From NCBI GenBank assembly GCA_950097015.1, contig CATNEN010000007.1:11036001-11100000 (forward strand): a stretch of 64,000 nucleotides of DNA. The letters run 5' to 3'. The first letter of the stretch is position 1; each line of letters begins with the position of its first letter. A program made the position numbers and the translations under genes. This DNA comes from Macrostomum hystrix (Eukaryota; Animalia; Platyhelminthes). This document shows positions 4,163 to 31,149 of this stretch, one piece after another. Under the pieces are notes generated by a model that searched no databases, was not told the origin of the DNA, and was given only the letters and a program-made list of their open reading frames with translations.

Positions 4163-4965
4163 CCCTCTTTTTTTTACAACCCGCATACAGCCCGATTTAG
4201 AATATGGCGATTTCGGCCGGAGCCCTATTGCTGACTGGGGATTGATAAAGCATCTATATGCTAGGCCTTATCTATGACCCTAAATTCTTAAATTGTTAAG
4301 GTTTTCAAACAAAATAAATACTTTAGATTAACAGGCATTGTGTGAGGCAAGAGCTGCAAAAAACCCCTGATATTCCCTGATATAATAGCTAGGCCTATTA
4401 TGAATTTGCAGTTTCTCAATATTCAATAGTAATGGTACTAGTAGTTAACTATTTACTAAAGTAGCTAGAACAAACTTGAACAGGCAAAATCGTAGTAGAC
4501 TATTTTTAAAAATGGTTAAATGAAAATATGTAGTTAGAAGATTTTCAGAAAAAAACATACTATATTATTTTTTGTCAGAAGGCTGTGGACAAAGACACAT
4601 TATTCAATGAGGCATTTCTGCCATTCTGCTGACTCCAGAGCAATACACTCATGTAGGTGTGTACATCTGCCCTGACTCTCATTGTATGCAGTGTATACTT
4701 TGCATGTGGTAATTGGAGGTGGGTATTTAAATGTGTAAATTGCACGGCTCCCAAGTCCCCAAGCATTCTTTATTAGATTTTGAGTTATTTTATTCATGTT
4801 ATGATCATTATGAAAAATGCAAAAACCATAAAAGTATCTAATATATATATTTATATACACTAGTATTACACTTCTATAAAATTATTGTCTTGGACTCTAT
4901 TTACTCAAGAGAATTGTGCTAGTATAATATATTTAAAACTTCCAGACTGCTTCTTGCCAGGTAAA

Positions 4966-6219
4966 ATGTGTCGCTGGACCATGAGACCCACACACCAGCT
5001 TTTTGTCATTTCCCTGACCCTTGGCACCATCGTCACTGGCTATATTCTGATCCTGGGATTCCTCAACAGGGGCAGCGGCAACATTGGTGGCTACCGGCTG
5101 CTAGTCCAAGAGGCAGCACCCCTACCATTGCTGGCCAGCAACATTTGGCTGCAGCGGCGATGGCTCCGACTGCGCTGGCCACTACAGGCACAGCTGGTGA
5201 GGGAGCTGGTGCCGTACCTGGTTGTAGAGTGCAGCAATCGAGCCCCCTGCCTGGCCTTTGGCAGCCCCCTGTTCCACCGCTGGCGCAGCTGGCTGCCCCT
5301 GATTGACGAATGGACGGCACGAGGCCAGGCCGACTGCGGCGTCTCCTGTGACTTTGTGGCCGATGCCAGCGCGGCGGACGCGGTGCTGTTTCACGGGCGC
5401 GATCTGGAGCCCAGGATCACGCTGAGCCGGCACCCTGAGCAGCTCTGGATCTATGTCAACATGGAGTCCCCGCTGGCCACCAAGCGCTTCGGCTACGACG
5501 TATCCGCCGACCCAAAATTCCGCTTCCTGTTCAACTGGACAGCCACCACCATCTCGAGCAGCTCCATTCACCTTCCCTACGGTGCCTGGGAGCCGAGGCC
5601 GAGTCCGCTGCCAGCCGGGGAGCCGCTGTACTCCCCCAGCAGCAAGAAGCACCTGGCATTCGTGGTATTCTCCAACTGCAAGCATTCCTTCAGCAACCGG
5701 ACAGAGAAGATTGCGCAGCTGCAGAAGTACATGGAGCTGCATGTCTACGGAGCCTGCGGCGACAGGCAGCTCCCGAGGAGCGCCACAGTGATCCAGGAAT
5801 TGTCCAAGAAGTACCGGTTCTACCTGAGCTTTGAGAACGCCTTCTGTCGCGACTACATCACGGAGAAGCTGCACTCCAACGGGCTCGAGTCGCACGCGGT
5901 TCCCGTTGCGTTCGGCGGCCTATCGCGCGCCGACTACGAGAAGGTGAGTCCGCCGAACTCGTTCGTGTACGCCCTGGACTTCACCAGCGCCAAGCAGCTG
6001 GCGGACCACCTGGCCGGCCTGGCAGCCGATGAGAGCCGCTACGCCCGGCTGCTCGAGTGGAAGCGGCAATTCCGGGCAGCTCCCAGTGCGTCAATGCTTT
6101 GCGCCATCTGCCGTAAGCTGCACAGCAGCTCCGCCCATGTACCAGCTGTGGCCGATCTCAGCGAGTTCTCAGACGTCGGGCGCAACTGCCAGCCCGTGGA
6201 TTCGCCCTACCTTCCGTGA
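4966..6219 (+). CDS. Alpha-1,3-fucosyltransferase (glycosyltransferase family 10), intronless, type II membrane protein
   Basis: First in-frame ATG at 4966. N-terminal TM segment LFVISLTLGTIVTGYILILGF. GT10 motifs ADAVLFH, WIYVNMESP, FNWTAT, and the alpha-1,3 motif YRFYLSFENAFCRDYITEKL. PPNSFV and C-terminal LCAIC also present. Confidence 0.93.
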   Translation: MCRWTMRPTHQLFVISLTLGTIVTGYILILGFLNRGSGNIGGYRLLVQEAAPLPLLASNIWLQRRWLRLRWPLQAQLVRELVPYLVVECSNRAPCLAFGSPLFHRWRSWLPLIDEWTARGQADCGVSCDFVADASAADAVLFHGRDLEPRITLSRHPEQLWIYVNMESPLATKRFGYDVSADPKFRFLFNWTATTISSSSIHLPYGAWEPRPSPLPAGEPLYSPSSKKHLAFVVFSNCKHSFSNRTEKIAQLQKYMELHVYGACGDRQLPRSATVIQELSKKYRFYLSFENAFCRDYITEKLHSNGLESHAVPVAFGGLSRADYEKVSPPNSFVYALDFTSAKQLADHLAGLAADESRYARLLEWKRQFRAAPSASMLCAICRKLHSSSAHVPAVADLSEFSDVGRNCQPVDSPYLP

Positions 6220-11482: not shown

Positions 11483-14400
11483 TCAACCCGGCACATATCG
11501 ATCAACCGGCATCCGCCTCCGCACCGGGTAGCGCCTCTGGGGCAGCTCGTCCGCAGCGTCTCCGCCGCCGTGCAGCTCGTGCGCGAAGGGCGGCTGCTCG
11601 AAACTCTCGACGTCGGGTGCCGGCAGGAACAGCGGCCGAAGGCGGTTTACGTTCACTCTGCGCGTCTTGCCATTCTTGCCGATCTCGACCACCAGATTGC
11701 GCTGGGACAGCACCCGCCAGCCGGGGTCCCAGTACGGCGCCAGCTTGGAGCCCCTCAGCTCGATGCGCAACAGCACCTCGTCGCCCTGGCCGAATCTGCG
11801 CAGCTGCCCGGCTGACCTGTTGTAGTCGCTCTGCTGCTCGCCAGCCGCCTGCACCAGGTGCTCCTCGACAAACTCTCGAATGCGCAGCAGGTCGGCCTCC
11901 AGCTTGTCTGCGTAGGTCCGCACGTCGTAGAACCGCCTGGGCTGCTGGCTGAGGACTGGCAGACAAGGGTCACGCCCGGTGAAGACCTTCAGCGGTGGCA
12001 GTCGCGTTGAGCAGTGCACTCGCGAGTTGTAGGACAGCAGGATCAGCGGCAGCTTGTCCTCCCACTCGCTCTCTCGCTCGGTGAAGCACCTGAGTAGTTG
12101 CAGCACGGACTTGTTTCCCGACTCGGCCAGTCCGTTTCCTTTCGGATTGTACGCTGTGGTTCTTGTCTTGGTGACTCCCAGACCGCACAGAGTGTCTTGA
12201 AAGAGCTGGCTCTCGAAATTCGGGCCTTGGTCCTAGTGGATGACTCGAGGCAGTCCAGCCTGGGAGCAGATTGAAAGGAAGGCGCGAGCCGTAGTCTGGG
12301 CCGTCTGGTCCGGTAACGCCACAGCCGTCAGGTACTTGGAAAATTGGTCCTGAGCTACCAGCAGGTAATGGTTGCCGCGTGATGATGGTGCCACCTTGAC
12401 GATGTCGATGGCCACCGAGTCCCATGGCGATCCGATAGGCAGCTCTCCGAGTGGCGCCTTGGGCTGCGAACCTGCCTTCTTCTCCTGGCAGACGGCGCAG
12501 CTCTGGCAGTGCTGCAGGACATCCTCAGCCATGCCCGGCCAGTAGGCAGTCAGCTTGAGCGTGCGGTAGCATTTCCCGGCACCGAAGTGGCCTCCCAGAC
12601 CTTCGTGAGCGTCTGCTAGGAACTGGTGTCGTAGAAATGCCGGCACCACTGGAACTTCCCTCAGTCCGTCCAGGTCGTTGAACTTGCGGGAGAGAACTCC
12701 GTCATCATTCAGCTTCAGCTTCCTCCAGATTCTGCTCAGCTGCTGCAGCGGTTCTGACCGCCATCTTGGAGGCACGTCTGGCTCGTTGACGATCGCTTGA
12801 ATCACCTGACTAAGCTCTGGATCTTGCCGCTGAGCAGTTTTGAGCTCCTCCGAGCCGATTTCTGCTGTCAGTTGAGTCGCTGCAATTTCCGGGGCGTGCA
12901 GCCTGGACAGCGCGTCGGCATCAGAATTCTCCACACCTCTGCGGTACTTGACGGTGAAGTCGAACTCTTGGAGCAGCAGCCGCCAGCGACCCAGCCTACC
13001 ATAGCTATCGATTCTCTGAGAATCGATGTAGGTGAGCGGGCAGTGATCCGTGTGCACCGTGAAATGCTTGCCGAGCAAGTAGTGCCGGAAGACTTTGAAA
13101 GCGTGCAGGATGGCCAGACACTCCTTCTCTGTTGCCGAGTACTTCTTCTCCGCCGAGTTGAACGCCCTGCTCGAAAACTCGATCACTGCATCGCCTTGCT
13201 TCAGGATTGCACGGACCCCACTGCCGCTGGCATCTGTGAAGACAGCGAACTCCTTGGAAAAGTCCGGGTTCACCAGGATCGGAGGACTCATCAGGCAGAT
13301 CTTGAGCTCGTCGAAGGCAGCTTGGCACTCTGCAGTCCACTCAAACGCCACGCCCTTGCCAGTCAGGTGGTGAAGTGGTGCAGCGATGGCAGCGAAGTTG
13401 GCGACATGGCGGCGGTACTGGTTGCACAGGCCGATGAACTGGCGGATCTCCTTGACTGACCTCGGCTCCTTCCACTGCTGAATCGCCTCCAGCTTCTCTT
13501 TGCTTGGCTGAGCTCCCTCCTTTGAATAGCGCATGCCGAGGAAAGTCACTTCAGGCACTGCGATCTTGCACTTGGAGCCTCTCAGTGTCAGCCCGGCTGC
13601 TCTGACTCGCTGAAGTGCCTCTCGCAGTTGCAGCAAATGCTCCTTCCTGGTCTTTGAGAAGCACAGGCTGTCATCGAAAAACGTGAAGACGAAGTCACAG
13701 CCATTGAAAACTTTGGACATAAGCATGCAGAACGTGCTGGGGCCACCTGACAGGCCTTGAGGCATTCTCTTAAATTGGTATAGCGGCATCCCTGGTCCAG
13801 GGCTAAAGGCCGTCTTCTGTCTGTCTTCTTCAGCCAGAGGGATCTGGAAGTAACCTCCATTGAGATCCAGCACTGAGAACACCGTGCTGCCCGCGATTCG
13901 ATCTCGTGCCTCCTCCATTAGCGGAATTCCCTGCGCCGACCGAATCGTCTTCTTGTTGAGCTCTCTGTAGTCGATGGTCAGCCGCAGGCTGCCGTCCTTC
14001 TTGGTCACGTACACCGGTGGAGCCACGTACGGACTCTCGCTCAGTTCGATCACGTCGTTCTCCAGCAGCTCCTGAATCAGCAGCTCCGCCTTCTCCCGGT
14101 AGTGCACGGGCATTCGGCGCGGTGGGACACGAACTGGCACCTCATCAGCGAGAACAATTCGATGCTGCTGGAGATGCGTAAGTCCCGGCTTCTTCTTGAA
14201 CACGTCCTTGAACTCCATCAGCAGTCGCTGAACTTCGGGGTCATCGGTGGTTGGCAGCTCGAAATCCACGCAGCTGAACTCGGGCACGAGAGCATCCTCG
14301 ATGTCAACTTGGTCGTCCGTCTCACTCTGGAACCTTGCACTGCAGATACGACCAGCAGCTGCAGGGTTGGCCTTGAAGTCCAGCTGCAAACGGTGCTTGC

Positions 14401-14812
14401 CGATGAAGTCGATCCCGACGATGACAGGACAAACCAAATCGGGCACCACGTAGAACAAATGCAGCGCTGTCACTTTCCCGACTGTGAGCGGCAACTCGAT
14501 CTGCCACTCGATGCTGATTGGCTGCTTGTTCACCGAGTGCAGCTGCACTCCGGCTGAAGTTGCGCGGCTGAGCTGCGATTTCGTCAGAATGCTGGAGTCG
14601 ACTAGTGAGCACTGGCTGCCGGTGTCTAAAAGCGCCTTCACACTTCTGCCATCAAGCTTGCACTCACACTGCGAAAGTCGGTCGGGCGTAACGCTGCATC
14701 CACTGAAGACCCCGCCGACTGCGAGCGCTGGCCCCGGAGCCTGCGCTGGTGAACCCGCAGTTACTGCTGGCCGAGGTGGCGGGCCCGCCCACCCCAGCCT
14801 CTGGCGTTTCCC
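11483..14812 (-). pseudogene. pol: Gypsy pol (protease-RT-RNaseH-integrase), -1 frame to gag, one in-frame TAG at 12233-12235
   Basis: Protease LLDTGS. RT motifs LRLTIDYRELN, LDLNGGYFQI, MPQGL and FFDD. RNase H TDASG...YSATEKE...TDH. Integrase H-H-C-C zinc finger and core AIDI...IH*DQG...NGLAE. ORFs 12233-14641 and 11483-12106 share one frame, separated only by the TAG. Confidence 0.93.
14750..14812 (-). promoter_or_regulatory. -1 ribosomal frameshift signal: slippery GGGAAAC plus downstream stem/pseudoknot
   Basis: GGGAAAC at 14812-14806, 6-nt spacer, then an 11-bp stem GGCTGGGGTGG/CCACCTCGGCC. The pol frame is open from here to the protease motif. Confidence 0.8.
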
Positions 14813-15543
14813 GACTGCTGCCGCCGGCTGTAGCAGTCCTTGGCGATGTGGCCGGTTTTGTGGCAGTTGTAGCAGACGATATCGGATCTCGGTCGGTGTG
14901 GCCTTGCTGTGCTTCTCACTCCACAGGCTGCCAGCTGCTCCAGCTGGGTGCTCAATGTACTCACTGAGGCCTGCAGTCTCTGCACTGTGTCCCGCAGCTC
15001 CTGAACTTCGCTGGACTGGCTCTGCCGAGGCTGTACCGCAGCTGCTTGCGTTGCTGCTGGATTGTGCTGCATCAGTAGCTGAGCCTTTTCCAGCGCTTGC
15101 ACTGAGGTCTTGATGTTGGTGTCTGCTCGAATCAGCCAGCCCACGGAGTCTGGCAGGCCACAGATGAACTGATGAAACAGCAGGGCTTCTCGAGCATCCA
15201 CATCGACCACGGCAGAGCTCTGCAGCAGTTTCTTCAACTCGTACAGGTACATGCGTGGAGTCTCACTTGCCAAAATTCTCCTCGCCTTGAACGCCTCCAT
15301 GACGGCGAAGTGCTCTCGGTCCGGGTGGAAAGCATTCTCCAGTGCTCCAGTAACTTTGCCGAATTCTGCCTGATCGGCTGCAGACAGTTCGAAATAGACG
15401 ACAAGGGCCTCGCCGTCTAGAAAAGTTGCCTTGCAAGCGTCCCACTTGTTCACTTTGGCACAAACTTCAAAACGCTGCAGCCATTCTTTAAAGTTGCCTG
15501 CACTGAATACTCTGGGCAGCGCTGCACCAGCTTTCTCAGCCAT
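14761..15543 (-). CDS. gag: Gypsy Gag with CCHC zinc knuckle
   Basis: ATG at 15543, just after the PBS. Capsid-like WLQRFEVCA...FICGLP and zinc knuckle CYNCHKTGHIAKDC. Confidence 0.92.
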   Translation of the reverse strand: MAEKAGAALPRVFSAGNFKEWLQRFEVCAKVNKWDACKATFLDGEALVVYFELSAADQAEFGKVTGALENAFHPDREHFAVMEAFKARRILASETPRMYLYELKKLLQSSAVVDVDAREALLFHQFICGLPDSVGWLIRADTNIKTSVQALEKAQLLMQHNPAATQAAAVQPRQSQSSEVQELRDTVQRLQASVSTLSTQLEQLAACGVRSTARPHRPRSDIVCYNCHKTGHIAKDCYSRRQQSGNARGWGGRARHLGQQ

Positions 15544-15551
15544 TGTGGAAA

Positions 15552-15566
15552 CCACGCTCTGCTACC
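15552..15566 (-). promoter_or_regulatory. Primer-binding site complementary to the 3' end of initiator tRNA-Met
   Basis: Minus strand TGGTAGCAGAG(CGTGG) immediately downstream of the 5' LTR. Eukaryotic tRNAi-Met ends ...CUCUGCUACCA. Confidence 0.85.
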
Positions 15567-19745: not shown

Positions 19746-22700
19746 TCAGAGCTGCCGTAAGCGCCTGACCACGCGGCGCAGCGAGCGAGTTTGCCTGCCG
19801 GAGCTGGCCAACGCCTTCTCCATGTAGCGCCGCTGTCTGCACACGGAGCTGCCAAACTCGGCCAGCGTCAGGCAGCCGTCATTGTTCTCGTCCTTCAGGA
19901 TGATAGGCAAGAGCTGCGGGCGCAAGTTTCCGTGGTAGAACTGGTTGAAGTGGTGGGCGAAGATGACGCTGCTGCCGTAGCGGCTGTACCAGGGGCTGCC
20001 GGCCAGGAAGCCGCGCACCGTGAGCATCTGCCTCTGGCCGAACTCGCTGCGAAAGTCGCCAGGCAGCAGGTTGGACCAGATCTCGGCAGCCTGCGCGTCA
20101 AGGACGTCCTCAAGGCTGGCGCTGCCGTTTGCGTGAGCGAGGCGAGATTGTACTTCTGTGCAATGGCCTGATCTATTTCTGTGTCTCTGCAATGGTCTGA
20201 TCTATTTCTGTGTCTCTGCAATGGCCTGATCTATTTCTGTGTCTCTGCAATGGCCTGATCTATTTCTGTGTCTCTGCAATGACCTGATCTATTTCTGTGT
20301 CTCTGCAATGACCTGATCTATTTCTGTGTCTCTGCAATGGCCTGATCTATTTCTGTGTCTCTGCAATGGCCTGATCTATTTCTGTGTCTCTGCAATGACC
20401 TGATCTATTTCTGTGTCTCTGCAATGGCCTGATCTATTTCTGTGTCTCTGCAATGGCCTGATCTATTTCTGTGTCTCTGCAATGACCTGATCTATTTCTG
20501 TGTCTCTGCAATGGCCTGATCTATTTCTGTGTCTCTGCAATGACCTGATCTATTTCTGTGTCTCTGCAATGACCTGATCTATTTCTGTGTCTCTGCAATG
20601 ACCTGATCTATTTCTGTGTCTCTGCAATGACCTGATCTATTTCTGTGTCTCTGCAATGGCCTGATCTATTTCTGTGTCTCTGCAATGACCTGATCTATTT
20701 CTGTGTCTCTGCAATGGTCTGATCTATTTCTGTGTCTCTGCAATGGCCTGATCTATTTCTGTGTCTCTGCAATGGCCGGATCTATTTCTGTGTCTCTGCA
20801 ATGGCCGGATCTATTTCTGTGTCTCTGCAATGACCTGATCTATTTCTGTGTCTCTGCAATGGCCGATGTAGGACTCCGGTAAATTAACTTCAATAGGTGA
20901 AATGCGCATTTTTAAGAGCCCGCCAGCCCAAATGCTATTCTTAGAAGTCCTCGGGTAGCTGAGCAGCTTTGTGACCCACAGACTCGCTACTCACTGCCGA
21001 ACTGGCCCACGAACCAGTGGGCCGCGTAGTACAGACTGTCCGCCATGACATCCAACGGCAGACGCGCCTCGTTGAACCTCTCGTTGAACCTCACGCAGCC
21101 ACCGGCGCCCAGCCGCAACGGCGCAATTTTGAGGGTGCCGGCGCCGTACAGCTGCTCAAACCGAATCCGCGCCAGCTCGTGCGCCACCCACATGCGCACG
21201 AAAGTGCTCTCCGGGGAGCATTTTCTGCTGAACTCCGCCACGTTGAAGTCTGACTCTAGCAGGTCAATCCTGGCCGCTGACTGTGCCAGGATGAGCGCGG
21301 CTGAAAGGCAATTTTGACAGTAACTGGTGTCTGACTGATTGCAACTGGTGTCTGACTGATTGCAACTGGTGTCTGACTGATTGCAACTGGTGTCTGACTG
21401 ATTGCAACTGGTGTCTGACTGATTGCAACTGGTGTCTGACTGATTGCAACTGGTGTCTGACTGATTGCAACTGGTGTCTGACTGATTGCAACTGGTGTCT
21501 GACTGATTGCAACTGGTGTCTGACTGATTGCAACTGGTGTCTGACTGATTGCAACTGGTGTCTGACTGATTGCAACTGGTGTCTGACTGATTGCAACTGG
21601 TGTCTGACTGATTGCAACTGGTGTCTGACTGATTGCAACTGGTGTCTGACTGATTGCAACTGGTGTCTGACTGACTGCAACTGGTGTCTGACTGATTGCA
21701 ACTGTTGTCTGACTGATTGCAACTGGTGTCTGACTGATTGCAACTGGTGTCTGACTGACGGCAACTGGTGTCTGACTGATTGCAACTGGTGTCTGACTGA
21801 CGGCAACTGGTGTCTGACTGATTGCAACTGGTGTCTGACTGACGGCAACTGGTGTCTGACTGACTGCAACTGGTGTCTGACTGATTGCAACTGGTGTCTG
21901 ACTGATTGCAACTGGTGTCTGACTAATTGCAACTGGTGTCTGACTGATTGCAACTGGTGTCTGACTAATTGCAACTGGTGTCTGACTGATTGCAACTGGT
22001 GTCTGACTGATTGCAACTGGTGTCTGACTGATTGCAACTGGTGTCTGACTGATTGCGACTGGTGTCTGACTGATTGCAACTGGTGTCTGACTGATTGCAA
22101 CTGGTGTCTGACTGATTGCAACTGGTGTCTGACTGATTGCAACTGGTGTCTGACTGATTGCAACTGGTGTCTGACTGATTGCAACTGGTGTCTGACTGAT
22201 TGCAACTGGTGTCTGACTGATTGCAACTGGTGTCTGACTGATTGCAACTGGTGTCTGACTGATTGCAACTGGTGTCTGACTGATTGCAACTGGTGTCTGA
22301 CTGATTGCAACTGGTGTCTGACTGATTGCAACTGGTGTCTGACTGATTGCAACTGGTGTCTGACTGATTGCAACTGGTGTCTGACTGATTGCAACTGGTG
22401 TCTGACTGATTGCAACTGGTGTCTGACTGATTGCAACTGGTGTCTGACTGATTGCAACTGGTGTCTGACTGATTGCAACTGGTGTCTGACTGATTGCAAC
22501 TGGTGTCTGACTGATTGCAACTGGTGTCTGACTGATTGCAACTGGTGTCTGACTGATTGCAACTGGTGTCTGACTGATTGCAACTGGTGTCTGACTGATT
22601 GCAACTGGTGTCTGACTGATTGCAACTGGTGTCTGACTGATTGCAACTGGTGTCTGACTGATTGCAACTGGTGTCTGACTGATTGCAACTGGTGTCTGAC

Positions 22701-24359
22701 TGATTGCAACTGGTGTCTGACTGATTGCAACTGGTGTCTGACTGATTGCAACTGGTGTCTGACTGATTGCAACTGGTGTCTGACTGACGGCAACTGGTGT
22801 CTGACTGATTGCAACTGGTGTCTGACTGATTGCAACTGTTGTCTGACTGATTGCAACTGGTGTCTGACTGATTGCAACTGGTGTCTGACTGATTGCAACT
22901 GGTGTCTGACTAATTGCAACTGGTGTCTGACTGATTGCAACTGGTGTCTGACTAATTGCAACTGGTGTCTGACTGATTGCAACTGGTGTCTGACTGATTG
23001 CAACTGGTGTCTGACTGATTGCAACTGGTGTCTGACTGATTGCGACTGGTGTCTGACTGATTGCAACTGGTGTCTGACTGATTGCAACTGGTGTCTGACT
23101 GATTGCAACTGGTGTCTGACTAATTGCAACTGGTGTCTGACTGATTGCAACTGGTGTCTGACTAATTGCAACTGGTGTCTGACTGATTGCAACTGGTGTC
23201 TGACTGATTGCAACTGGTGTCTGACTGATTGCGACTGGTGTCTGACTGATTGCAACTGGTGTCTGACTGATTGCAACTGGTGTCTGACTGACTGCAACTG
23301 GTGTCTGACTGATTGCAACTGGTGTCTGACTGATTGCAACTGGTGCCTGACTGATTGCAACTGGTGTCTGACTGATTGCAACTGGTGTCTGACTGATTGC
23401 AACTGGTGTCTGACTGATTGCAATTGGTGTCTGACTGATTGCAACTGGTGTCTGACTGATTGCAACTGGTGTCTGACTGAGCTGTGTGTGCGAGCCTTAT
23501 GGTTTTGTTTTGTTTTAATGCAAATCACGGAAATGTTCTTGGAGCTAAAAGACGTTGTTACACTTAAGATATGCAAGTTTAGATCAAGTTACATCTCGCA
23601 AAATCCATCATCAAAAAGCATTCGCTCCGTTTGCAAAGACAGGCGCGCAGATTCCAGAACAACTCCCACAATCTTGAATCACCACTGTACTGCTTCGGAA
23701 AGCTAGAGATTTTGTTTTGCGAGTGCGCAATTCTTCTATTGGCGTGCAATAAATTCCGAAAATATGCCTGTGCGAGCTCAGCTGTTAACGCAGGATTATA
23801 ATAAGACACTAAAATCTTATAACTAATAATTTTCTGGCAAGCGAGCAGTTTGTTTTGGAGACTGACTTGAAATTGTAAAAATTTATATTATTAATTTATC
23901 TGTTCAAGTGAAACTTTACAGTTACACAGTTACAGTGAGCTGTGAGTTCAGTGAGCTGTGAGTTCAGTGAGCTGTGAGTTCAGTGAGCTGTGAGTTCAGT
24001 GAGCTGTGAGTTCAGTGAGCTGTGAGTTCAGTGAGCTGTGAGTTCAGTGAGCTGTGAGTTCAGTGAGCTGTGAGTTCAGTGAGCTGTGAGTTCAGTGAGC
24101 TGTGAGTTCAGTGAGCTGTGAGTTCAGTGAGCTGTGAGTTCAGTGAGCTGTGAGTTCAGTGAGCTGTGAGTTCAGTGAGCTGTGAGTTCAGTTAAAAGGA
24201 AAAATTGGAAACTGGAAATGGGAGATAAAGCAACAATTTTATCCCTGAGTCACAGTGCAAAGTTTAGCGGCCGAGCTAATCAAGGAAAGCAGCGAGACGT
24301 GACATGCCTAGCCCGGCCGAGAACTTACCACAGGCCAGAAGAACAACCGCAGATGCCAT
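19746..24359 (-). CDS. Secreted EF-hand protein of unknown family, 248 aa, 3 exons
   Basis: Exons 24359-24329, 21300-20995 and 20155-19746 (GT-AG, phases 1 and 1; 747 nt = 249 codons including stop). Splicing yields signal peptide MASAVVLLACAALILAQSAA. Canonical EF loop DENNDGCLTLAE. Basic C-terminal tail. Confidence 0.75.
20159..20864. repeat. 29-bp intronic minisatellite (CAATGGCCTGATCTATTTCTGTGTCTCTG), ~24 copies
   Basis: Fills most of intron 2 of the EF-hand gene and abuts its acceptor. Confidence 0.96.
21322..23480. repeat. 21-bp intronic minisatellite (GCAACTGGTGTCTGACTGATT), ~103 copies
   Basis: Directly visible. Source of the spurious SVRHQLQ ORF. Confidence 0.97.
23933..24193. repeat. 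16-bp intronic minisatellite (CAGTGAGCTGTGAGTT), ~16 copies
   Basis: Directly visible. Confidence 0.96.
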
Positions 24360-24672: not shown

Positions 24673-25535
24673 TACCCAAGCTAGTGAAGGCGATACCCAA
24701 GCTGGTGAAGGCGATACCCAAGCTAGTGAAGGCGATACCCAAGCTGGTGAAGGCGATACCCAAGCTGGTGAAGGCGATACCCAAGCTAGTGAAGGCGATA
24801 CCCAAGCTAGTGAAGGCGATACCCAAGCTAGTGAAGGCGATACCCAAGCTAGTGAAGGCGATACCCAAGCTGGTGAAGGCGATACCCAAGCTAGTGAAGG
24901 CGATACCCAAGCTGGTGAAGGCGATACCCAAGCTAGTGAAGGCGATACCCAAGCTAGTGAAGGCGATACCCAAGCTAGTGAAGGCGATACCCAAGCTAGT
25001 GAAGGCGATACCCAAGCTAGTAGAGGCGATACCCAAGCTAGTAGAGGCGATACCCAAGCTAGTAGAGGTGATACCCAAGCTAGTATAGGCGATACCCAAG
25101 CTAGTATAGGCGATACCCAAGCTAGTGAAGGCGATACCCAAGCTAGTGAAGGCGATACCCAAGCTAGTAGAGGCGATACCCAAGCTAGTAGAGGCGATAC
25201 CCAAGCTAGTAGAGGTGATACCCAAGCTAGTATAGGCGATACCCAAGCTAGTATTGGCGATACCCAAGCTAGTAGAGGCAATACCCAAGCTAGTATTGGC
25301 GATACCCAAGCTAGTAGAGGCGATACCCAAGCTAGTAGAGGCGATACCCAAGCTAGTAGAGGTGATACCCAAGCTAGTAGAGGCTAGTAGTGAAGGCGAT
25401 ACCCAAGCTAGTCTGGGAGACTCGATACCCAGTCTGGGAGACTCGATACCCAGTCTGGGAGACTCGATACCCAGTCTGGGAGACTCGATACCCAGTCTGG
25501 GAGACTCGATACCCAGTCTGGGAGACACGATACCC
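24673..25535. repeat. Compound 21-bp minisatellite: GATACCCAAGCTAGTGAAGGC (~35x) then GATACCCAGTCTGGGAGACTC (~6x)
   Basis: Two related units sharing CGATACCCA. Intergenic, between the EF-hand and TRP genes. Confidence 0.96.
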
Positions 25536-26207
25536 AACGAAACCCACCCAGCCAAATGTTCAGTCCATCGCCTACTACTGTCAATAGCCAGTTCACACTA
25601 CTACGAGCGTACAAGCTAAACCAAAAAAGTGACAGCAGCTGACCACTGAGACTGTGGCTGCTTCATGGAGACAAATTATCAGCCCTGGCTAATTAATTGT
25701 AGCACAATAATAAATATTGTCTGACACTGCGGGTTCCATATCTCTGCCAGACTTTGTGGCGCTGCGGGCAGTCCAGAGCCAGATAAGCGGCCTCACTGCC
25801 AAGTCAGATTGGCCATTTCGTGGAACTTGTCGTGCACAATTCAAGTTGCTGGGAACCGAGAAATAAACTACCAAAGTTCACAAGCTCCGCGCTAGAGTTT
25901 TACAGGCAAAAAGAAAACCAAAAGAGGTTTGTTATTACGAGCTATTAGAGCAAGCACAACAGGTCCTGACAGATGAAAGCGGATCCTAGTCATTGTGGGC
26001 TGTGAAGCCAATCCGATGAATGCGAGTGCGACAGATCTTTATTCCTAGAAAAGCTTGCGGTTTCAGGAGTTTCTACGACAAACGAATGCGCAGCGGAAGG
26101 GAGCGGGGCTAAAGCTGGTGAGGCAGTCAGGCAGGAAGGTCCTTGACCTCCGATTGAAGCGGCACAGGCAGGAAGCAGGAAGACAGCGGGGTGGAGGCTG
26201 CTGGTTT

Positions 26208-29200
26208 TCACAGGTCTTCCCGGCCCTCCTCAATGAAGGGCATGGCCATTACAGAGGCCCGCTTGTTGCTGATGTTGCTGGGACCGCGGAGGCTGATGGC
26301 TTTGAGCTCCTTGACCAGCGACTCCAGCTTCTTGACCGTCTCCTCCACCCGGTCGAACCGCATTAGGCGCTCGTTGATGGCGTTGACTTGCTGGAAGATG
26401 ATCTTGTTGCCCTCGTCCAGGTCCTCCTCGTCCAGCACAACGCCGTTGAAATCGGAGCGGCGGTTGCGGAAGGCCAGCGCCTGCGGGAGCGGGCAGAGGG
26501 TTTGTACTTGCTGACTGGCCTCCTTAACACATTCTCCATCACCTGCCAGCTTACCTGGTAGTACAGGCTCAGCATGTACACTTTGCAGTCATGCGGCGTC
26601 TCTCCAACGGGCAGGGCCCCGCCAGCCGCCGCCGCAGCCTCAGCAGCAACCACTGCTGCTGCGGGCAGCCCGCGCTGCGGCGCCTCGCCGGAACTGCGCC
26701 GCCGCGCTCGCCTCAAGAGGTAGATTGCCAGGTTGCGCAACTCGGTCAGAATGTTGAAAGGCGGCGGCAGCGCCGACCGCGTGTTGAACTCCTCGATGAG
26801 ATCGAACTTCTCGAACTGCCACATGGCCTTGGACTCGCTGTCAATGGCGTCGATGGTTTTGCTGAACATGGCGACGATGACATTCAGCAGCAGGATCTGC
26901 ATAACAACAATGTACAGCACCATGTACACGGTGGGCACCAGCACTGCTCCAATGGGGTGCACGCAGTCCGGCAAGTCTCCATCGTCGGCATTTGGTCCGC
27001 CCATGTCGCTGATGTTGCAGGCCTTGACATCGTTAAGGCCGTACTCGCCGACGATGGCGTAGAAGGTGTTCCGGAACATGCCCAGGATGATCTCGTTGGC
27101 GCTCTCGCGACCCTCCGAGCCGGTGCCGCTGCTCTGGATGGACTTGCCCTCTGGGAATTGCAGCGCCTGGGTTTGGCAATCGACAGATTGGCGGGGGCTG
27201 TGGCAAAGGCTCTTACAATAAGAAATGCAATAACAATAACAATGCACTGCTCACGTGAAAGGTGACTCCGAAGCCGAACATGAGCACGAACAGAATAAAT
27301 AGGAAGGGCAGGAAATCCTTCTTCACCATCAGCGACATCATCTTGAGCTTGGGTCCGAGGCTCTCCAGCACAACGGAGATGTAGAGCAGGCGCACCCAGT
27401 ACACCAGGCAGGTGGTGGTGAGCAGCACCAGGGACCAGTAGCGTTGAAACGGATTGTGGACGGAGCTGTTGTGAATCCTGAGCGCGAAGGCCACGAAGCC
27501 GCAGGTGATGGCGGTGATGTCGATGACGTTCCAGCCGTCGAAAAAGTAGTTCTTGATCGACTCCTCCCTGGCGGCGGTGATCATCTCGTTGATCTCCTCG
27601 ACCAAGAAGCCGAGCAGAGTCAGGTAGCAGACGATCTCCCCCACAGTGATAGCCCGGCCCATCTGGAACATGACCACATAGGACAGCAGCAGCACGAATG
27701 TGATGTGCGCCGTCACGTGCATGCGGAACTTCACGCAGGGGATCTGATAGAAGCGCAGCAGCTCAGACAATGAGCTCAGCTTCTGCTGCGGCCGCAGCTG
27801 CTGACTGGGCCGGCCCTGAATTAGCGACACCTCTGGGCCGTCCTGGCGAGTCTCATTCAGCGGGCAGCCGCCGCCGTCATTGTTTCCGGATGCCTGCCCG
27901 GCCGCCTCGCTGGGGACTCCGCTGGGCTTCACATAGTCGGGCTCGTGCACCCGGAAGCGGGGCATGAGGAACAGCAGCACAGGGTACAGGGGCGGCACAA
28001 AGCCGCAGGCGATGGCCAGCTCGACTAGCAGAGTCTGGCCGGGGTCTTTCAGCGCGAAGAAGAAGTCGGTGTACCACATGCGGTTAAGCGCCTCCTTGGA
28101 TGCCGGGGGTTGGTTGGTTCGGGATCGCCGTCCCAGACTTAGGATAATTTAATATTAACTAATTAGGATGGCTTACCTGCACAATATCGATGATGACGAA
28201 GTTGCTTGACTCGCCCTTGGCGGCCAGCTCAAGGATGCTGTAGCCGCCGAATGTCTCTAGAGGCAGCATCACCAGCTCCATGGTCAGGCAGTTGTTCGAT
28301 GTGACGTCGACATCCTTGATGCTGCGCAGAGCCTGGATGGCGATGCCTTCGCAGGTGATGGCCATCTTGGTGGCCTTGTTGGCGTAGACGTCCTCGATGT
28401 CCCGCCGGCGGCCGAGGCTGCGCAGAATTTTGGCCAGCAGCAGCGCCTGCGGAATGGTGTCGAAGTCCTCCTGGCGCAGGAAGTAGGGCGCCAGCCGCAG
28501 CCGGCCGGTCAGCACGCACCACATGGCCAGCGACTCCACCGGGTCCCGCATCGCCTGCAGCCGCTGGTCCGCAGCTGCCGGGCTGGCAGCCGGCGTCGTG
28601 TCGCCCGCGGACTCGGAGTCGGACTCACCGACCCACTGCAGCTGCCAGAACTGAGTCAGCTGCGCCACCAGCCGGTGCAGCTTGGAACTGCTCACGCGGC
28701 CCTCCTCGTTGAGGCAGTTACGGTAGACCAGGCCTTTGATGCCGTCCTTGCGGCGCTCGCCCAGGCTCCGGTCGTACACCTGGCGGCGGTGCGGCGCATT
28801 GCAATGTTCTGATTTGTGATATTCCCCAGTATGTCAAGAATACGAGGCCTTTCCCATATGGCCTTTCTCGTATGGCCTTTCCCATACTTTGGTATTTGCT
28901 GATTACTTGCTTAAAACCGCAATCGATTGGGAAATCTCACATCTCAACAGCACTCACGTTTATGATCCTGTTTTCCAGGTGCGCCACCACCGCCGACCAC
29001 AGCATCCCGAGCTTCATCACCTCCTGCAGCAGCGCCTCGTTCTGTGGCACGAAGATGTGCTTGAGGAAATTGTCGGCGATTTTTCCCACCATGCCAGCCT
29101 TGATGATCTCGTCCGCCAGGCCGCTCGTGCACGCCTTCAGCACAATGTCCACGAACTCATTGATGTCGAACTTGTCGCTGAAGCGGATATGAGTAAGCAG

Positions 29201-30254
29201 CGTGTCGTTGGTGTGGTCATCTAGTAGGTTCGTCTCCTCGTCGCATTCGTTGTGGCCGAAGTTGTGCTGGAACTCATTGTCCACGGTTCGCAGCAGTCGG
29301 AGGAAGCGCTGGCCCTGCGGCATTGCCAGCAGCTCCTGGATGCTGCTGCCTCCGCTATTCAGCACCGGGTTGACCATCCACTGGCCCATGCCCTCCAGGA
29401 TTGCCGTGTCCTGCGCGGAGGAGGTGTGGAGCGGGAGGTGCGCTTGAAGAAGCACTCACGCCACTCACCACTGCCCTTAACTGAGCATTGCAAGAAAGAG
29501 GCCTCACCTGCTTTGCCAGCACGATGTCGATAGCCGTGCGCTCCTGCACGTCGTAGAGGTCCAGCCTCGGTCCGAAGCTCAGCACAGTCAGGAAGAGCTT
29601 GGAGTTGCCCAGGTTGGCCGCAATGTGCAGAGGCGTGAAGCCCCTGGCACCGTGCCTGTTGCGCAGGTGCGGCCGGTGCGCTAAGAGGAGCTCAGCGGCC
29701 CGGACATTCTCCTCCAGGCAGGCCCGGTGGATTGGCAGGTCGCCGTGCAGGTCAAAGGTGTCGCAGTTGGCGCCATGGTCGAGCAGCAGGTGCAGGAACC
29801 GTTCGTCGCCCCGGTGTCGGACAGCGGTGTGTACTGTGGACTCGATATTGTTGCGGCCGCCATTGGGGACGGCGCCACGATCCAGCAGCAGCTGCAGGGC
29901 CTCGAAGGAGCGCTGCGTCAGCGCCAGTTCCAGTGCCGTTTGGCCCTTCTTAGTGGTGGCCTCCAGCTCCGCCTAGGTGGGGTTGGTGCAATGAGTTAAA
30001 TGAGTGCACCTTCCATATTGGCTTCTGCAACAACAGCGAAGCGAAGAATGCCACCGATAAGGCGAACTGAACAATGCTCTCACCTGCTGATCGAGAAGGA
30101 TGGCCAGCACGTCGACGCGGTTGTCAGCCGCAGCGCGGTGAATCAGGCGCCAGCCGAGGCTGCTGTCCAGCTCCGAGTTCGGCGAGCAGCTGCCCGTGGC
30201 CAGCATCTCGCGCAGCAGCGCCGGGGACTCGGAGGCCCGCTGCAGGCTGCCCAT
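26208..30254 (-). CDS. Ankyrin-repeat TRPM-like cation channel, ~1138 aa, 7 exons
   Basis: Exons 30254-30084, 29972-29508, 29410-28958, 28779-28177, 28094-27255, 27166-26555 and 26480-26208, all GT-AG and phase 0. Ankyrin repeats (GWRLIHRAA, GQTALELA, GDLPIHRAC, GFTPLHIAA). TRPM-type motifs: PVESLAMWCVLTGR..LA.YF, LELA...S.NF...VQ..L...W, FYQIPCVKF, YFFDGWNVID, LGPKLKMM, pore FYAIVGE with a Cys pair, LLLNVIVAMFS, TRP box WQFEK...LPPPF, and a C-terminal coiled coil. Confidence 0.9.
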
Positions 30255-31149
30255 GCTGCCCGCTGGTCCGGGAAGAGGCAAAGACTCGTAGAGACGCTGG
30301 GTGGAGGAGGGCAGCGAGGTAGTCGGAGGACGCTATGGCGCTGCTGCTGAGACTTTGCAGCTTCAAATACGGTTCTGGGTAGAGTGAGGTACGCCCACCC
30401 CACCGCCCCTCACTGGCCGCCTCAGTGTGCAGAGCCTGCGGTCTTTGACTGCGAGTTCTGAGCGGCAGCTGCGGCGCCAGTCCCCAGGGCCTCCCCACCT
30501 CCCCCAACCAATGAGTAAGAAGTGAGGCGCTGCGGCTGTGTTCAGTGCAGGGAGGGGAGGATGACAGTCAGAGTAGACAACTTCGCTACTGTCTTTTTTA
30601 TCTGAATTAGCGCATGCAGTGAGAGCTATTGTGCCCTTGTCTGCCAGTGGGGGGAGCCGGTGTTTGTGCAAGAAGTTGACTGCATTCGCAGACGCCGCTC
30701 GAGGCAGTTCACTGCCTTTTTTTCAAGTGGAATAGAAAAACAAGCCCCAAACTGTTTCGTGTCAGTTCGAGATGAATTCGAATGCCTGACCTTGTGGGCC
30801 GAGGAGTCAGTTTTGTGCAGACGTGGCTTCTGTTTGTACTTGCAGCAATGAGCCCCCGGTCTCTTCCTACCTGCCATCGCTCTGCTCCAACACAGCAAGC
30901 GAGCTATAGGAATTGTTGCAGCCGGGCAGATAAGGCGCGGCCGCCCGCTGAGGAGCGGCTGCCTGCACAGAGCCAAAGGCTGCGTAGAGGGAAAGTGCAG
31001 GCCCGAGCAGTGCGACCCGCCGCATGCCGTCGGACTGTTTTTACTGTTAGCCGCTGGCGGACCAAAATAATTCAAGGCCCGGAATTAGCTTGCGCCTGCC
31101 CTGGCGCAACGGTCCCACTGCTGCTTTAGCTGACTGCAGCTGTGAATAC

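What the first reader, a model, noticed from the sequence alone, without database searches (positions are those of the whole stretch)
26208..30254. Chimeric TRP channel: canonical ankyrin repeats fused to a TRPM-type MHR4/pore/TRP-box body
Seen: seven phase-0 exons joined by short GT-AG introns give one ~1138-aa ORF. It has 5-6 textbook ankyrin repeats, a ~200-aa linker I cannot assign, then TRPM-diagnostic MHR4/pre-S1 motifs. Also present: the S2-S3 Ca2+-site residues (EE..E, WN..D), a GE filter with paired outer-pore Cys, a TRP box (WQFEK) and a coiled coil. There is no NUDT9-H or kinase domain. Known: canonical TRPMs begin with the SLOG-like MHR1/2 domain and lack classical ankyrin arrays, which typify TRPA/N/V/C. 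Inference: a lineage-specific or relict ANK-TRPM subfamily in which ankyrins replace MHR1/2, possibly with different gating. The ORF track hides it because the main ankyrin exon is not listed in its coding frame.
Basis: partly seen in the sequence, partly recalled or inferred. Interest (0 to 1): 0.85.

Follow-up and report, generated by a model that had tools for sequence, protein, structure and literature searches.

The report
Flatworm ankyrin-bearing TRPM-like channel gene
This is a real, spliced and transcribed Macrostomum flatworm gene for an ion channel with ankyrin repeats where ordinary TRPM channels have their SLOG domain. That layout is already published for TRPM_MCLZ, the schistosome target of meclonazepam, so this is a new free-living relative, not a new kind of channel.

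Summary
Seven phase-0 exons on the minus strand (30254..26208), joined by six GT-AG introns, encode 1138 aa. Single spliced contigs from three public runs cross all six junctions, including the ankyrin/channel junction 29508/29410. A 1141-aa Macrostomum lignano protein (A0A1I8J777) is collinear with all seven exons.

Domains, in order:
- about seven ankyrin repeats;
- about 100 aa of unassigned helices;
- a TRPM MHR3/4-type domain (PF25508);
- a TRPM-type S1-S6, TRP helix and coiled coil.

There is no SLOG, Nudix or kinase domain.

TRPM_MCLZ of parasitic flatworms is described with exactly this layout (PMC11731825, PMC12861061). In a tree of the S1-TRP region the window gene falls in a Macrostomum-only radiation (100/99). 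That radiation is sister to the clade holding accession-verified TRPM_MCLZ orthologues, and the joint ankyrin-bearing clade has support 95/92. All SLOG-bearing TRPMs lie outside it.

The genome holds at least 19 related loci, and five of them are intronless ORFs with the same domains. This scan had already reported the same gene type at other places in this genome.

Verdict: new member of a known kind, of modest interest. Whether the clade arose inside TRPM or beside it remains unresolved.

The parts
30255..30351 (-). 5' UTR (minimum extent)
   Evidence: The spliced contig X5 record 5 reaches 30351, and X6 and X7 reach 30323/30324. There is no upstream in-frame ATG before the stop near 30335.
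30084..30254 (-). Exon 1, 57 aa: start ATG at 30254-30252, N-terminal cap and first ankyrin repeat ('GWRLIHRAAADNRVDVLAILL')
   Evidence: P0001 residue 1 aligns at 30254. The donor GT at 30083 is used in contigs of four runs.
29508..29972 (-). Exon 2, 155 aa: main ankyrin-repeat exon
   Evidence: Pfam Ank_2 7.1e-15, Ank_5, Ank, Ank_3 and Ank_4. In the AlphaFold model of the orthologue, residues 1-226 align to gankyrin, Notch and DARPin ankyrin domains with Z 22-24.
28958..29410 (-). Exon 3, 151 aa: last (degenerate) ankyrin-like repeat, then about 100 aa of helical linker with no family assignment
   Evidence: No Pfam hit. Folded alone it is all-helical with pLDDT 78.7 and has no specific fold match, with Z at most 7.2. 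Profile homology to TRPM starts only in its last ~10 residues. The junction 29508/29410 is confirmed by spliced contigs.
28177..28779 (-). Exon 4, 201 aa: TRPM MHR3/4-type domain (PF25508 match at about 28195-28596), ending in the 'FVIIDIVQ' motif before pre-S1
   Evidence: Pfam PF25508 TRPM2-like, 1.4e-9. hhalign of the clade profile against SLOG-TRPM N-termini gives 99.4% probability and E 3.4e-21, matching P0001 355-581 to P0295 542-799.
27255..28094 (-). Exon 5, 280 aa: pre-S1 ('EALNRMWYTDFFF'), a variable loop, S1 (27666-27734), S2 with E-E..E (27570-27641), S3 with WN..D (27474-27545), S4 (27366-27437) and S5 (27255-27314)
   Evidence: phmmer against PDB: 60 of 66 hits are shown, all TRPM except one algal TRP1, with nvTRPM2 best at 1.9e-15. 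The acceptor at 28094 is used in all contigs, and an in-frame NAGNAG alternative lies at 28091.
26555..27166 (-). Exon 6, 204 aa: pore helix and 'GE' filter (27035-27088), outer-pore Cys pair (26963-27019), S6 (26861-26953), TRP helix 'AMWQFEKFDLIEEF' (26753-26827) and an Ala/Arg-rich loop
   Evidence: phmmer against PDB: the top 60 hits are all TRPM, with TRPM1 best at 4.5e-15. That alignment matches the pore helix, filter GE and both Cys.
26208..26480 (-). Exon 7, 90 aa plus stop (TGA at 26210-26208): rib-helix region and C-terminal coiled coil (26295-26414)
   Evidence: The clade profile aligns to TRPM4 through chain residue 1182 and to TRPM2 through 1189. The AlphaFold model has a long helix at 1073-1114.
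26110..26207 (-). 3' UTR (minimum extent)
   Evidence: Spliced contigs X5, X6 and X7 end at 26110.

Best explanation
The locus is an intact, expressed gene of a Macrostomum flatworm. The species is a congener of M. lignano, not M. lignano itself. The gene encodes one subunit of a tetrameric TRP cation channel of the flatworm-specific, ankyrin-bearing 'TRPM-like' group whose characterised member is TRPM_MCLZ (Smp_333650).

Shown here:
- The seven-exon structure and its use in mRNA.
- The domain order: about seven ankyrin repeats, a helical linker, a TRPM MHR3/4 domain, S1-S6, a TRP helix and a coiled coil.
- The absence of SLOG, Nudix and kinase domains.
- Its place in a Macrostomum-only gene radiation that is sister to the TRPM_MCLZ clade.

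Inferred from conserved residues and from what is known of TRPMs:
- It assembles through the C-terminal coiled coil.
- It conducts cations, including Ca2+. The filter is a TRPM1/3/6/7-like 'GE' filter with the TRPM pore-loop cysteine pair.
- It keeps the S2-S3 Ca2+ site (E, E in place of Q, N, D), so cytosolic Ca2+ probably gates or co-gates it.
- It keeps the S1-S4 ligand cavity. The TRPM_MCLZ pocket residues H827, H831, E868 and R943 are identical here. Y864, H946 and Y1117 are replaced by F, Y and F.
- Without a SLOG or Nudix domain it cannot be ADP-ribose-gated in the TRPM2 manner. The ankyrin array most likely serves as a protein-docking or regulatory module.

The natural stimulus is unknown.
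For: Gene and transcript.
- establish the model.
- In one search, single contigs from runs X5, X6 and X7 span 26110-30351 with all six introns removed at the predicted GT-AG sites. Two of the junctions also appear in run X1 of a second study.
- One search shows collinearity with P0001, at 67-86% identity per exon.

Family assignment.
- Pfam finds ankyrin repeats, PF25508 and Ion_trans.
- PDB sequence hits for exons 5 and 6 are TRPM.
- The clade profile scores 217-294 bits against TRPM chains, with alignments starting in the MHR3/4 region or at S1 and ending at the TRP helix or coiled coil. It scores 54 bits against the NOMPC transmembrane part.
- Foldseek on the orthologue model returns TRPM3, 2, 5, 4 and 8 as best hits over 840-1100 columns.

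Link to TRPM_MCLZ.
- P0302 is CAH8438365.1 and P0322 is CAH8481013.1, the accessions named as TRPM_MCLZ orthologues in PMC10788528.
- Both carry ankyrin repeats and no SLOG.
- P0001 against P0322 gives 25% identity over 603 aa, E 1e-46.
- Careful tree: ankyrin clade 95/92, Macrostomum clade 100/99, window exon 5 with P0001 100/99.

The fusion does not depend on splicing. Five paralogues in the same genome are single uninterrupted ORFs of 1107-1177 aa with ankyrin repeats and PF25508, three of them also Ion_trans at the threshold used.

Function of a clade member. Sm.TRPM_MCLZ gives Ca2+ signals and single-channel currents in HEK293 cells (PMC10788528).
Against: - No functional data exist for this gene or for any Macrostomum paralogue.
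- It is only about 25% identical to TRPM_MCLZ. It is not its one-to-one orthologue, so drug sensitivity and gating cannot be carried over.
- The S2 site has E where TRPMs have Q, and Ca2+ binding is untested.
- The runs that hold the spliced contigs are not recorded as RNA. Their RNA origin is inferred from the exact removal of the introns.
- About 100 aa of exon 3 have no assignment.
- Pfam's TRPM_tetra model does not hit the coiled coil.
Confidence: 0.88

Rival explanations
1. The flatworm ankyrin-bearing clade, holding this gene and TRPM_MCLZ, is not a derived TRPM. It is an old, separate TRP lineage that kept an ancestral ankyrin N-terminus, and it is sister to TRPM plus TRPS. That is the 'relict' reading.
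For: - With P0076 and P0087 as outgroup, the clade is sister to all SLOG-bearing sequences, including a protist one (P0110, Rhodelphis marinus).
- Ankyrin and SLOG are mutually exclusive, and no intermediate forms were seen.
- Himmel et al. 2020 infer that ankyrins were lost before the TRPM-TRPS split, so a lineage that kept them would be basal.
Against: - Every named member is a flatworm protein, and the bivalve and lamprey relatives fall outside the clade. An ancient lineage surviving in one phylum alone would need many losses.
- The clade sits on long branches.
- AU tests do not reject trees that place it above the protist-like rows (p 0.357) or next to a flatworm SLOG-type TRPM group (p 0.0985).
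- The outgroup rows are unnamed, long-branched sequences.
Confidence: 0.08
2. The 1138-aa protein is a gene-model artefact. An ankyrin-repeat gene and a truncated TRPM gene lie next to each other and were joined only on paper.
For: All introns are phase 0, so any subset of exons would stay in frame.
Against: - Single contigs cross all six junctions in three runs.
- The M. lignano orthologue is collinear end to end.
- Five paralogues have the same domains in one uninterrupted ORF.
- TRPM_MCLZ was cloned from cDNA with the same layout.
Confidence: 0.01
3. The channel is really a diverged TRPC, TRPN or TRPA. Those families normally carry ankyrin repeats, and TRPC also has linker helices, a TRP box and a coiled coil. 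On this view the similarity to TRPM is superficial.
For: The overall layout of ankyrin repeats, helical linker, six TM helices, TRP helix and coiled coil is also the TRPC layout.
Against: - Exon 5 hits 66 PDB sequences at E up to 0.01. The 60 shown are TRPM apart from one algal TRP1.
- The top 60 hits for exon 6 are all TRPM.
- PF25508 (TRPM2-like) is found and no TRPC domain (TRP_2) is reported.
- The NOMPC transmembrane part scores 54 bits against 217-294 bits for TRPM chains.
- hhalign to the TRPM MHR3/4 region gives 99.4% probability.
Confidence: 0.02
4. The gene is a redundant, decaying copy in a large paralogue family. It is transcribed but no longer makes a working channel.
For: The genome has at least 19 related loci. 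The pre-S1 and post-TRP loops are low-complexity and vary between species.
Against: - The 1138-codon frame is intact, with canonical splice sites.
- Identity to the M. lignano orthologue is 77-86% in exons 3-7 and 90% in the aligned S1-S5 columns.
- The residues invariant across the clade (E734, E735, W756, N757, G815 and others) are kept.
Confidence: 0.03

Closest known systems
TRPM_MCLZ (Schistosoma mansoni Smp_333650; orthologues CAH8481013.1 in S. bovis and CAH8438365.1 in S. turkestanicum), the meclonazepam-activated 'TRPM-like' channel of parasitic flatworms
   Same: - N-terminal ankyrin repeats instead of SLOG/MHR1-2, and no C-terminal enzyme domain.
- A TRPM-type S1-S6, TRP helix and C-terminal helices.
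- The same well-supported clade in the tree (95/92).
- Pocket residues H827, H831, E868 and R943 are conserved.
   Different: - Only about 25% identical over MHR4 to the TRP helix.
- The window gene belongs to a Macrostomum-only radiation that is sister to the clade holding TRPM_MCLZ, not inside it. It is a co-orthologue or paralogue, not the orthologue.
- It is shorter (1138 against 1380 aa) and has seven exons against three.
- The TRP box is WQFEK here against HWLAGR.
- Pocket positions 864, 946 and 1117 are F, Y and F here.
- Drug sensitivity is unknown.
Macrostomum lignano A0A1I8J777 (P0001; 'ANK_REP_REGION domain-containing protein', uncharacterised)
   Same: It is the orthologue: 1141 aa, collinear with all seven exons at 67-86% identity, with the same Pfam domains.
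   Different: It comes from another species. It carries only an automatic name in the database, and I found no paper about it.
Canonical TRPM channels (for example nvTRPM2 6co7, TRPM3, TRPM1, TRPM4)
   Same: - MHR3/4-type domain, pre-S1, S1-S6 and the S2-S3 Ca2+-site pattern.
- A 'GE' filter with the pore-loop Cys pair, as in TRPM1/3.
- TRP helix and coiled coil.
   Different: - No SLOG/MHR1-2; ankyrin repeats stand in its place.
- No Nudix or kinase domain.
- E instead of Q at the second S2 Ca2+-site position.
- It lies outside all SLOG-bearing sequences in the tree.
TRPC channels
   Same: The same order of parts: ankyrin repeats, helical linker, six TM helices, TRP helix and C-terminal coiled coil (general knowledge of TRPC structures).
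   Different: No TRP_2 domain is found, and the sequence and profile hits go to TRPM, not TRPC. The TRP box is of the TRPM kind.
TRPN/NOMPC and TRPA1
   Same: Ankyrin repeats precede a six-TM TRP channel. NOMPC and TRPA1 appear in the PDB profile search through their ankyrin arrays.
   Different: They have 29 (NOMPC) or about 16 (TRPA1) repeats, against about seven here. The NOMPC transmembrane part scores only 54 bits, and neither has a PF25508 domain.

Membership tests
TRPM (canonical melastatin family) | N-terminal MHR1/2 = SLOG (LSDAT) domain | tested here: not met
   There is no LSDAT/SLOG Pfam hit in any exon, in P0001 or in the paralogues. phmmer with a TRPM SLOG region hits 67 of the best relatives but none of the ankyrin-bearing ones.
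TRPM (canonical melastatin family) | MHR3/4 region before pre-S1 (Pfam PF25508, TRPM2-like domain) | tested here: met
   Exon 4 matches PF25508 at 1.4e-9, above the curated cut-off. hhalign gives 99.4% probability and E 3.4e-21 against the same region of SLOG-bearing TRPMs.
TRPM (canonical melastatin family) | S1-S6, pore and TRP helix closest to TRPM among TRP families | tested here: met
   The PDB hits for exons 5 and 6 are TRPM. The profile scores 217-294 bits against TRPM chains and 54 bits against the NOMPC transmembrane part. The Foldseek top hits are TRPM.
TRPM (canonical melastatin family) | C-terminal coiled coil used for tetramerisation | tested here: inconclusive
   The profile aligns to TRPM4 and TRPM2 through their C-terminal helices, and AlphaFold gives a 42-residue helix. 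Pfam TRPM_tetra does not hit, and oligomerisation was not modelled.
TRPM_MCLZ-type ankyrin-bearing 'TRPM-like' channels of flatworms | Ankyrin repeats at the N-terminus in place of SLOG/MHR1-2, and no C-terminal enzyme domain (PMC11731825, PMC12861061) | tested here: met
   for the gene and its orthologue. One search shows the same for P0322. The published description was read.
TRPM_MCLZ-type ankyrin-bearing 'TRPM-like' channels of flatworms | Groups with accession-verified TRPM_MCLZ orthologues in a phylogeny | tested here: met
   The joint clade has support 95/92, and the window gene falls in the Macrostomum sister radiation (100/99). The accessions were verified. Membership is at clade level only, not one-to-one orthology.
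TRPM_MCLZ-type ankyrin-bearing 'TRPM-like' channels of flatworms | Conserved S1-S4 pocket residues: H831 and R943 invariant in 63 orthologues; H827 and E868 well conserved | tested here: met
   The alignment puts H694, H698, E735 and R803 of P0001 opposite H827, H831, E868 and R943. The window has the same residues ('RMHVTAH', 'VEEINE', 'WVRLLY').
TRPM_MCLZ-type ankyrin-bearing 'TRPM-like' channels of flatworms | Activation by (S)-meclonazepam | not testable with these tools
   This needs a Ca2+ reporter assay or electrophysiology. The S4 position is Y here, the variant linked to lower sensitivity in S. japonicum.
TRPC | TRP_2 / linker-helix domain of TRPC, and transmembrane part closest to TRPC | tested here: not met
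   There is no PF08344 hit, and no TRPC chain appears among the 60 best PDB hits shown for exon 5 or exon 6.
TRPN / TRPA | Long ankyrin array (about 29 or about 16 repeats), and transmembrane part closest to NOMPC or TRPA1 | tested here: not met
   There are about seven repeats. The NOMPC transmembrane part scores 54 bits against at least 217 for TRPM.
TRPS (soromelastatin) | SLOG and Nudix domains and no ankyrin repeats (Himmel et al. 2020) | tested here: not met
   No SLOG and no Nudix, and ankyrin repeats are present. The definition was read.

The most novel reading that the evidence does not exclude
The flatworm ankyrin-bearing clade, holding this gene, its many Macrostomum paralogues and TRPM_MCLZ, is a separate and ancient TRP family that kept the ancestral ankyrin N-terminus. 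It would be sister to TRPM plus TRPS, not a TRPM that swapped its SLOG domain for ankyrins. That would overturn the inference that ankyrins were lost once before the TRPM-TRPS split.
Probability: 0.08. Interest if true: 0.6.

Novelty: new member of a known kind. Interest (0 to 1): 0.25.

Why it matters
The ankyrin-for-SLOG layout is already known from TRPM_MCLZ, a validated anthelmintic target, so the finding does not add a new class of channel. It adds two modest points.

- **Free-living relatives.** Relatives of that drug target exist in a free-living, experimentally tractable flatworm genus. The TRPM_MCLZ papers I read list orthologues only from parasitic flatworms.
- **A large radiation.** Macrostomum has expanded the group to at least 19 loci, several of them intronless. 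That makes the genus a possible model for learning what these channels sense and what the ankyrin module does.

It also leaves one evolutionary question open and testable: did the clade arise by domain replacement inside TRPM, or is it an older lineage?

Tried and rejected
- **No joined protein.** I never joined the seven exons into one protein for any tool or script. Exons were searched one by one by reference. The public M. lignano orthologue P0001 and the intronless paralogues stood in for the full-length product.
- **Full-length word-index search** with P0001 was swamped by ankyrin-3 hits.
- **The same search restricted to residues 365-1141** reached almost only Macrostomum proteins: 16 of 18 hits.
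- **Exon 4 alone against PDB sequences** gave nothing.
- **Structure route to name the linker.** Exon 3 folded alone has no specific match by VIA-align wide (best Z 7.2) or Foldseek (best E 0.76). I therefore do not call it MHR3. A profile alignment to nvTRPM2 that reaches back to P0001 residue 295 was not reproduced by hhalign, which starts at residue 355.
- **VIA second look on the whole model** showed only ankyrin matches.
- **Introner idea.** The six introns share no similarity with one another, so there is no sign of a repeated inserted element.
- **AU tests** did not resolve the deep position of the clade.
- **Not used:** Complex prediction, the protein atlas and RNA-family tools, because nothing hinged on them.

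Full report
**What is in the sequence**

On the minus strand between 30254 and 26208 there are seven open pieces joined by six short GT..AG introns.
- The exons are 30254-30084, 29972-29508, 29410-28958, 28779-28177, 28094-27255, 27166-26555 and 26480-26208.
- They hold 3417 coding bases, which is 1138 codons plus a stop.
- Every intron is phase 0. Their lengths are 111, 97, 178, 82, 88 and 74 nt.
- Exon GC is 58-70% and intron GC is 46-60%.

Each exon was searched by reference.

**Domains, exon by exon**

- Pfam finds ankyrin repeats in exon 2 (Ank_2, 7e-15), the TRPM2-like domain PF25508 in exon 4 (1.4e-9) and Ion_trans in exons 5 and 6. Exons 1, 3 and 7 give nothing, and there is no Nudix or kinase domain anywhere.
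- Exon 5 searched against all PDB sequences gives 66 hits. The 60 shown are TRPM, apart from one algal TRP1, and nvTRPM2 is best at 1.9e-15.
- The top 60 hits for exon 6 are all TRPM, led by TRPM1 at 4.5e-15. That alignment covers the pore helix, the G-E filter, both outer-pore cysteines, S6 and the TRP helix.

**Is it one gene?**

Three independent lines say yes.

1. Public runs hold single contigs of 3612 nt (X5) and 3584 nt (X6) that run from 26110 to 30351 or 30323. A pair of overlapping contigs in X7 covers the same span.
   - All of them skip exactly the six predicted introns, each with CT..AC ends on the plus strand.
   - The skipped junctions include 29508/29410, between the ankyrin exons and the channel exons.
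   - Introns 1 and 5 are also removed in a contig of run X1 from a second study.
   - The runs are not recorded as RNA. Exact intron removal, and the fact that the window's genome holds only one full-identity copy of exon 5, make an mRNA origin the only sensible reading.
2. The best hit of an exhaustive HMMER search with exon 5 is a 1141-aa Macrostomum lignano protein (P0001, UniRef A0A1I8J777), 82% identical. It aligns to the window collinearly with the same exon ends.
3. The window's own genome (220 Mb in 42 contigs) has at least 19 related loci. Five of them are uninterrupted ORFs of 1107-1177 aa that carry ankyrin repeats plus PF25508, and three of them also show Ion_trans. The fusion therefore does not depend on any splicing model.

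**What the parts are**

I used P0001 as a full-length proxy, with an alignment of 29 clade members.
- AlphaFold gives a confident model, with mean pLDDT 76.5 and pTM 0.72.
- It has seven ankyrin-like helix pairs in residues 1-229. These superpose on gankyrin, Notch and DARPin domains with Z 22-24.
- Foldseek on the whole model returns TRPM3, TRPM2, nvTRPM2, TRPM5, TRPM4 and TRPM8 as top hits over 840-1100 alignment columns.
- The clade profile aligns to TRPM chains in single stretches. They run from the MHR3/4 region or from S1 to the TRP helix, and for TRPM4 and TRPM2 on to the C-terminal helices, at 217-294 bits. The NOMPC transmembrane part scores 54 bits.
- A profile-profile comparison of the linker region with the N-termini of 30 SLOG-bearing TRPMs gives 99.4% probability (E 3.4e-21). 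It matches P0001 355-581 to the 258 residues that precede pre-S1 in a canonical TRPM.

Firm TRPM homology therefore starts at the exon 3/4 boundary.

The first roughly 45 residues of exon 3 finish the ankyrin stack. The remaining roughly 100 residues are helical but have no specific match when folded alone. I leave that stretch unassigned. It may be a remnant of MHR3, but that is not shown.

**Where it belongs**

Among the 150 best relatives of exon 5, ankyrin repeats and the SLOG domain never occur together. The closest full-length hits all have ankyrins, and from rank 26 on the full-length hits have SLOG.

The nearest relatives outside Macrostomum that carry an organism name are proteins of parasitic flatworms.
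- Two of them, CAH8438365.1 (S. turkestanicum) and CAH8481013.1 (S. bovis), are the very accessions that Park et al. list as TRPM_MCLZ orthologues.
- P0001 and the S. bovis protein are 25% identical over 603 residues (E 1e-46).

A careful maximum-likelihood tree of the S1-TRP region (64 rows; ultrafast bootstrap / SH-aLRT) gives:

| Grouping | Support |
|---|---|
| Window exon 5 with P0001 | 100/99 |
| Macrostomum-only clade | 100/99 |
| TRPM_MCLZ clade | 100/99 |
| TRPM_MCLZ clade plus three unnamed ankyrin-bearing proteins | 99/96 |
| Whole ankyrin-bearing clade | 95/92 |

All SLOG-bearing sequences lie outside the ankyrin-bearing clade. Bivalve and lamprey TRPM-like proteins that scored well also fall outside it. 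The window gene is therefore a member of a Macrostomum radiation that is sister to the clade holding TRPM_MCLZ, not the orthologue of TRPM_MCLZ.

**What is already published**

- Park et al. 2024 describe Sm.TRPM_MCLZ as having multiple ankyrin-like repeats before the six TM helices, and show that it is a working Ca2+-permeable channel (PMC10788528).
- Sprague, Rohr and Marchant 2024 state that it lacks MHR1/2 or SLOG and has ankyrin-like modules instead, with no C-terminal enzyme domain (PMC11731825).
- Rohr et al. 2026 call the group 'TRPM-like' because of the N-terminal ankyrin repeats, and list 63 orthologues from trematodes, monogeneans and cestodes (PMC12861061).
- I found no paper on Macrostomum members of this group. 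The Macrostomum TRPM studied so far is the SLOG-type TRPM_PZQ.
- Himmel et al. 2020 concluded that TRPM and TRPS lack ankyrins. The flatworm clade is an exception that the parasitology papers have since noted.

**How it probably works**

Shown: the gene, its mRNA, its domains and its relatives.

Inferred:
- A tetramer held by the C-terminal coiled coil.
- A cation pore with the TRPM1/3/6/7-type G-E filter and the TRPM pore-loop disulfide, so it is probably permeable to divalent cations.
- An S2-S3 Ca2+ site that is kept across the whole clade (E734, E735, W756 and N757 are invariant), with E in place of the usual Q.
- A conserved S1-S4 cavity. The meclonazepam-pocket residues H827, H831, E868 and R943 are identical here, and Y864, H946 and Y1117 become F, Y and F.
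- No SLOG or Nudix domain, so ADP-ribose gating of the TRPM2 kind is not expected.

The role of the ankyrin module and the natural stimulus are unknown.

**Open question**

With two long, unnamed rows as outgroup, the ankyrin clade is sister to all SLOG-bearing sequences, including one from the protist Rhodelphis. AU tests do not reject a position above those rows (p 0.357) or next to a flatworm SLOG-type group (p 0.0985). The choice between a domain swap inside TRPM and an old lineage beside it remains open. I think the first far more likely, because every named member is a flatworm protein.

**Earlier notes of this scan**

A words search showed that the same kind of gene had been reported at several other places of this genome. 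It also showed that follow-up agents had named Macrostomum and TRPM_MCLZ. I took that as a lead and tested it myself through the accessions, the papers and the tree.

**Limits**

**Verdict**

The structural reading is right, but the architecture is already known. This is a new member of a known kind.

Noticed in passing
G000: C2:8293549, C7:8935791, C1:15606689, C25:4121648, C3:6525675 (loci L013-L017): Five paralogues of the window gene are intronless single ORFs of 1107-1177 aa, while the window gene has six introns and other paralogues have introns at other positions. Exon-intron structure varies widely within this family.
   Followed up: partly
G000: C1:37692-158585 and C5:5960870-6064902: Two tandem clusters give weak matches to exon 5 (26% identity, E about 1e-6) inside very long open frames of 1242-3199 aa. 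They are probably another TRP gene family in array form, possibly the long-ankyrin genes noted earlier by this scan.
   Followed up: no
window 12236-15555 (-): An LTR-retrotransposon-like element. One 802-aa ORF carries reverse transcriptase, RNase H and integrase domains, and a 264-aa ORF upstream of it (14764-15555) has a gag-type zinc knuckle. Observed only.
   Followed up: no
window 4888-6216 (+): A 443-aa ORF with both halves of a family-10 fucosyltransferase (Glyco_transf_10, 8.7e-47).
   Followed up: no
window 21267-23576 (-): A 770-aa open frame that hits dozens of coiled-coil families (Filament, Tropomyosin and others). It is a long repetitive coiled-coil protein or exon, just downstream of the channel gene.
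   Followed up: no
window 23928-24192, 24673-25378, 25410-25536: Three minisatellites lie downstream of the channel gene's 3' end (26110): a 16-nt unit x16.5, a 21-nt unit x33.6 and a 21-nt unit x6. They produce the long repetitive 'ORFs' in the ORF list.
   Followed up: partly
window 28091-28096 (-): The acceptor of intron 4 is a NAGNAG site. Splicing at 28091 instead of 28094 would stay in frame and drop one Glu. All contigs laid use 28094.
   Followed up: partly
window 26810-26898 (loose ends): Several contigs of runs X5-X7 match only the conserved S6/TRP stretch and then diverge. These look like transcripts of paralogues, so other family members are expressed too.
   Followed up: no
P0110 (EukProt, Rhodelphis marinus, 1181 aa): A protist protein with a SLOG-type N-terminus and a TRPM-like transmembrane part is among the 150 best hits. 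This fits a pre-metazoan origin of the SLOG-TRP fusion.
   Followed up: no
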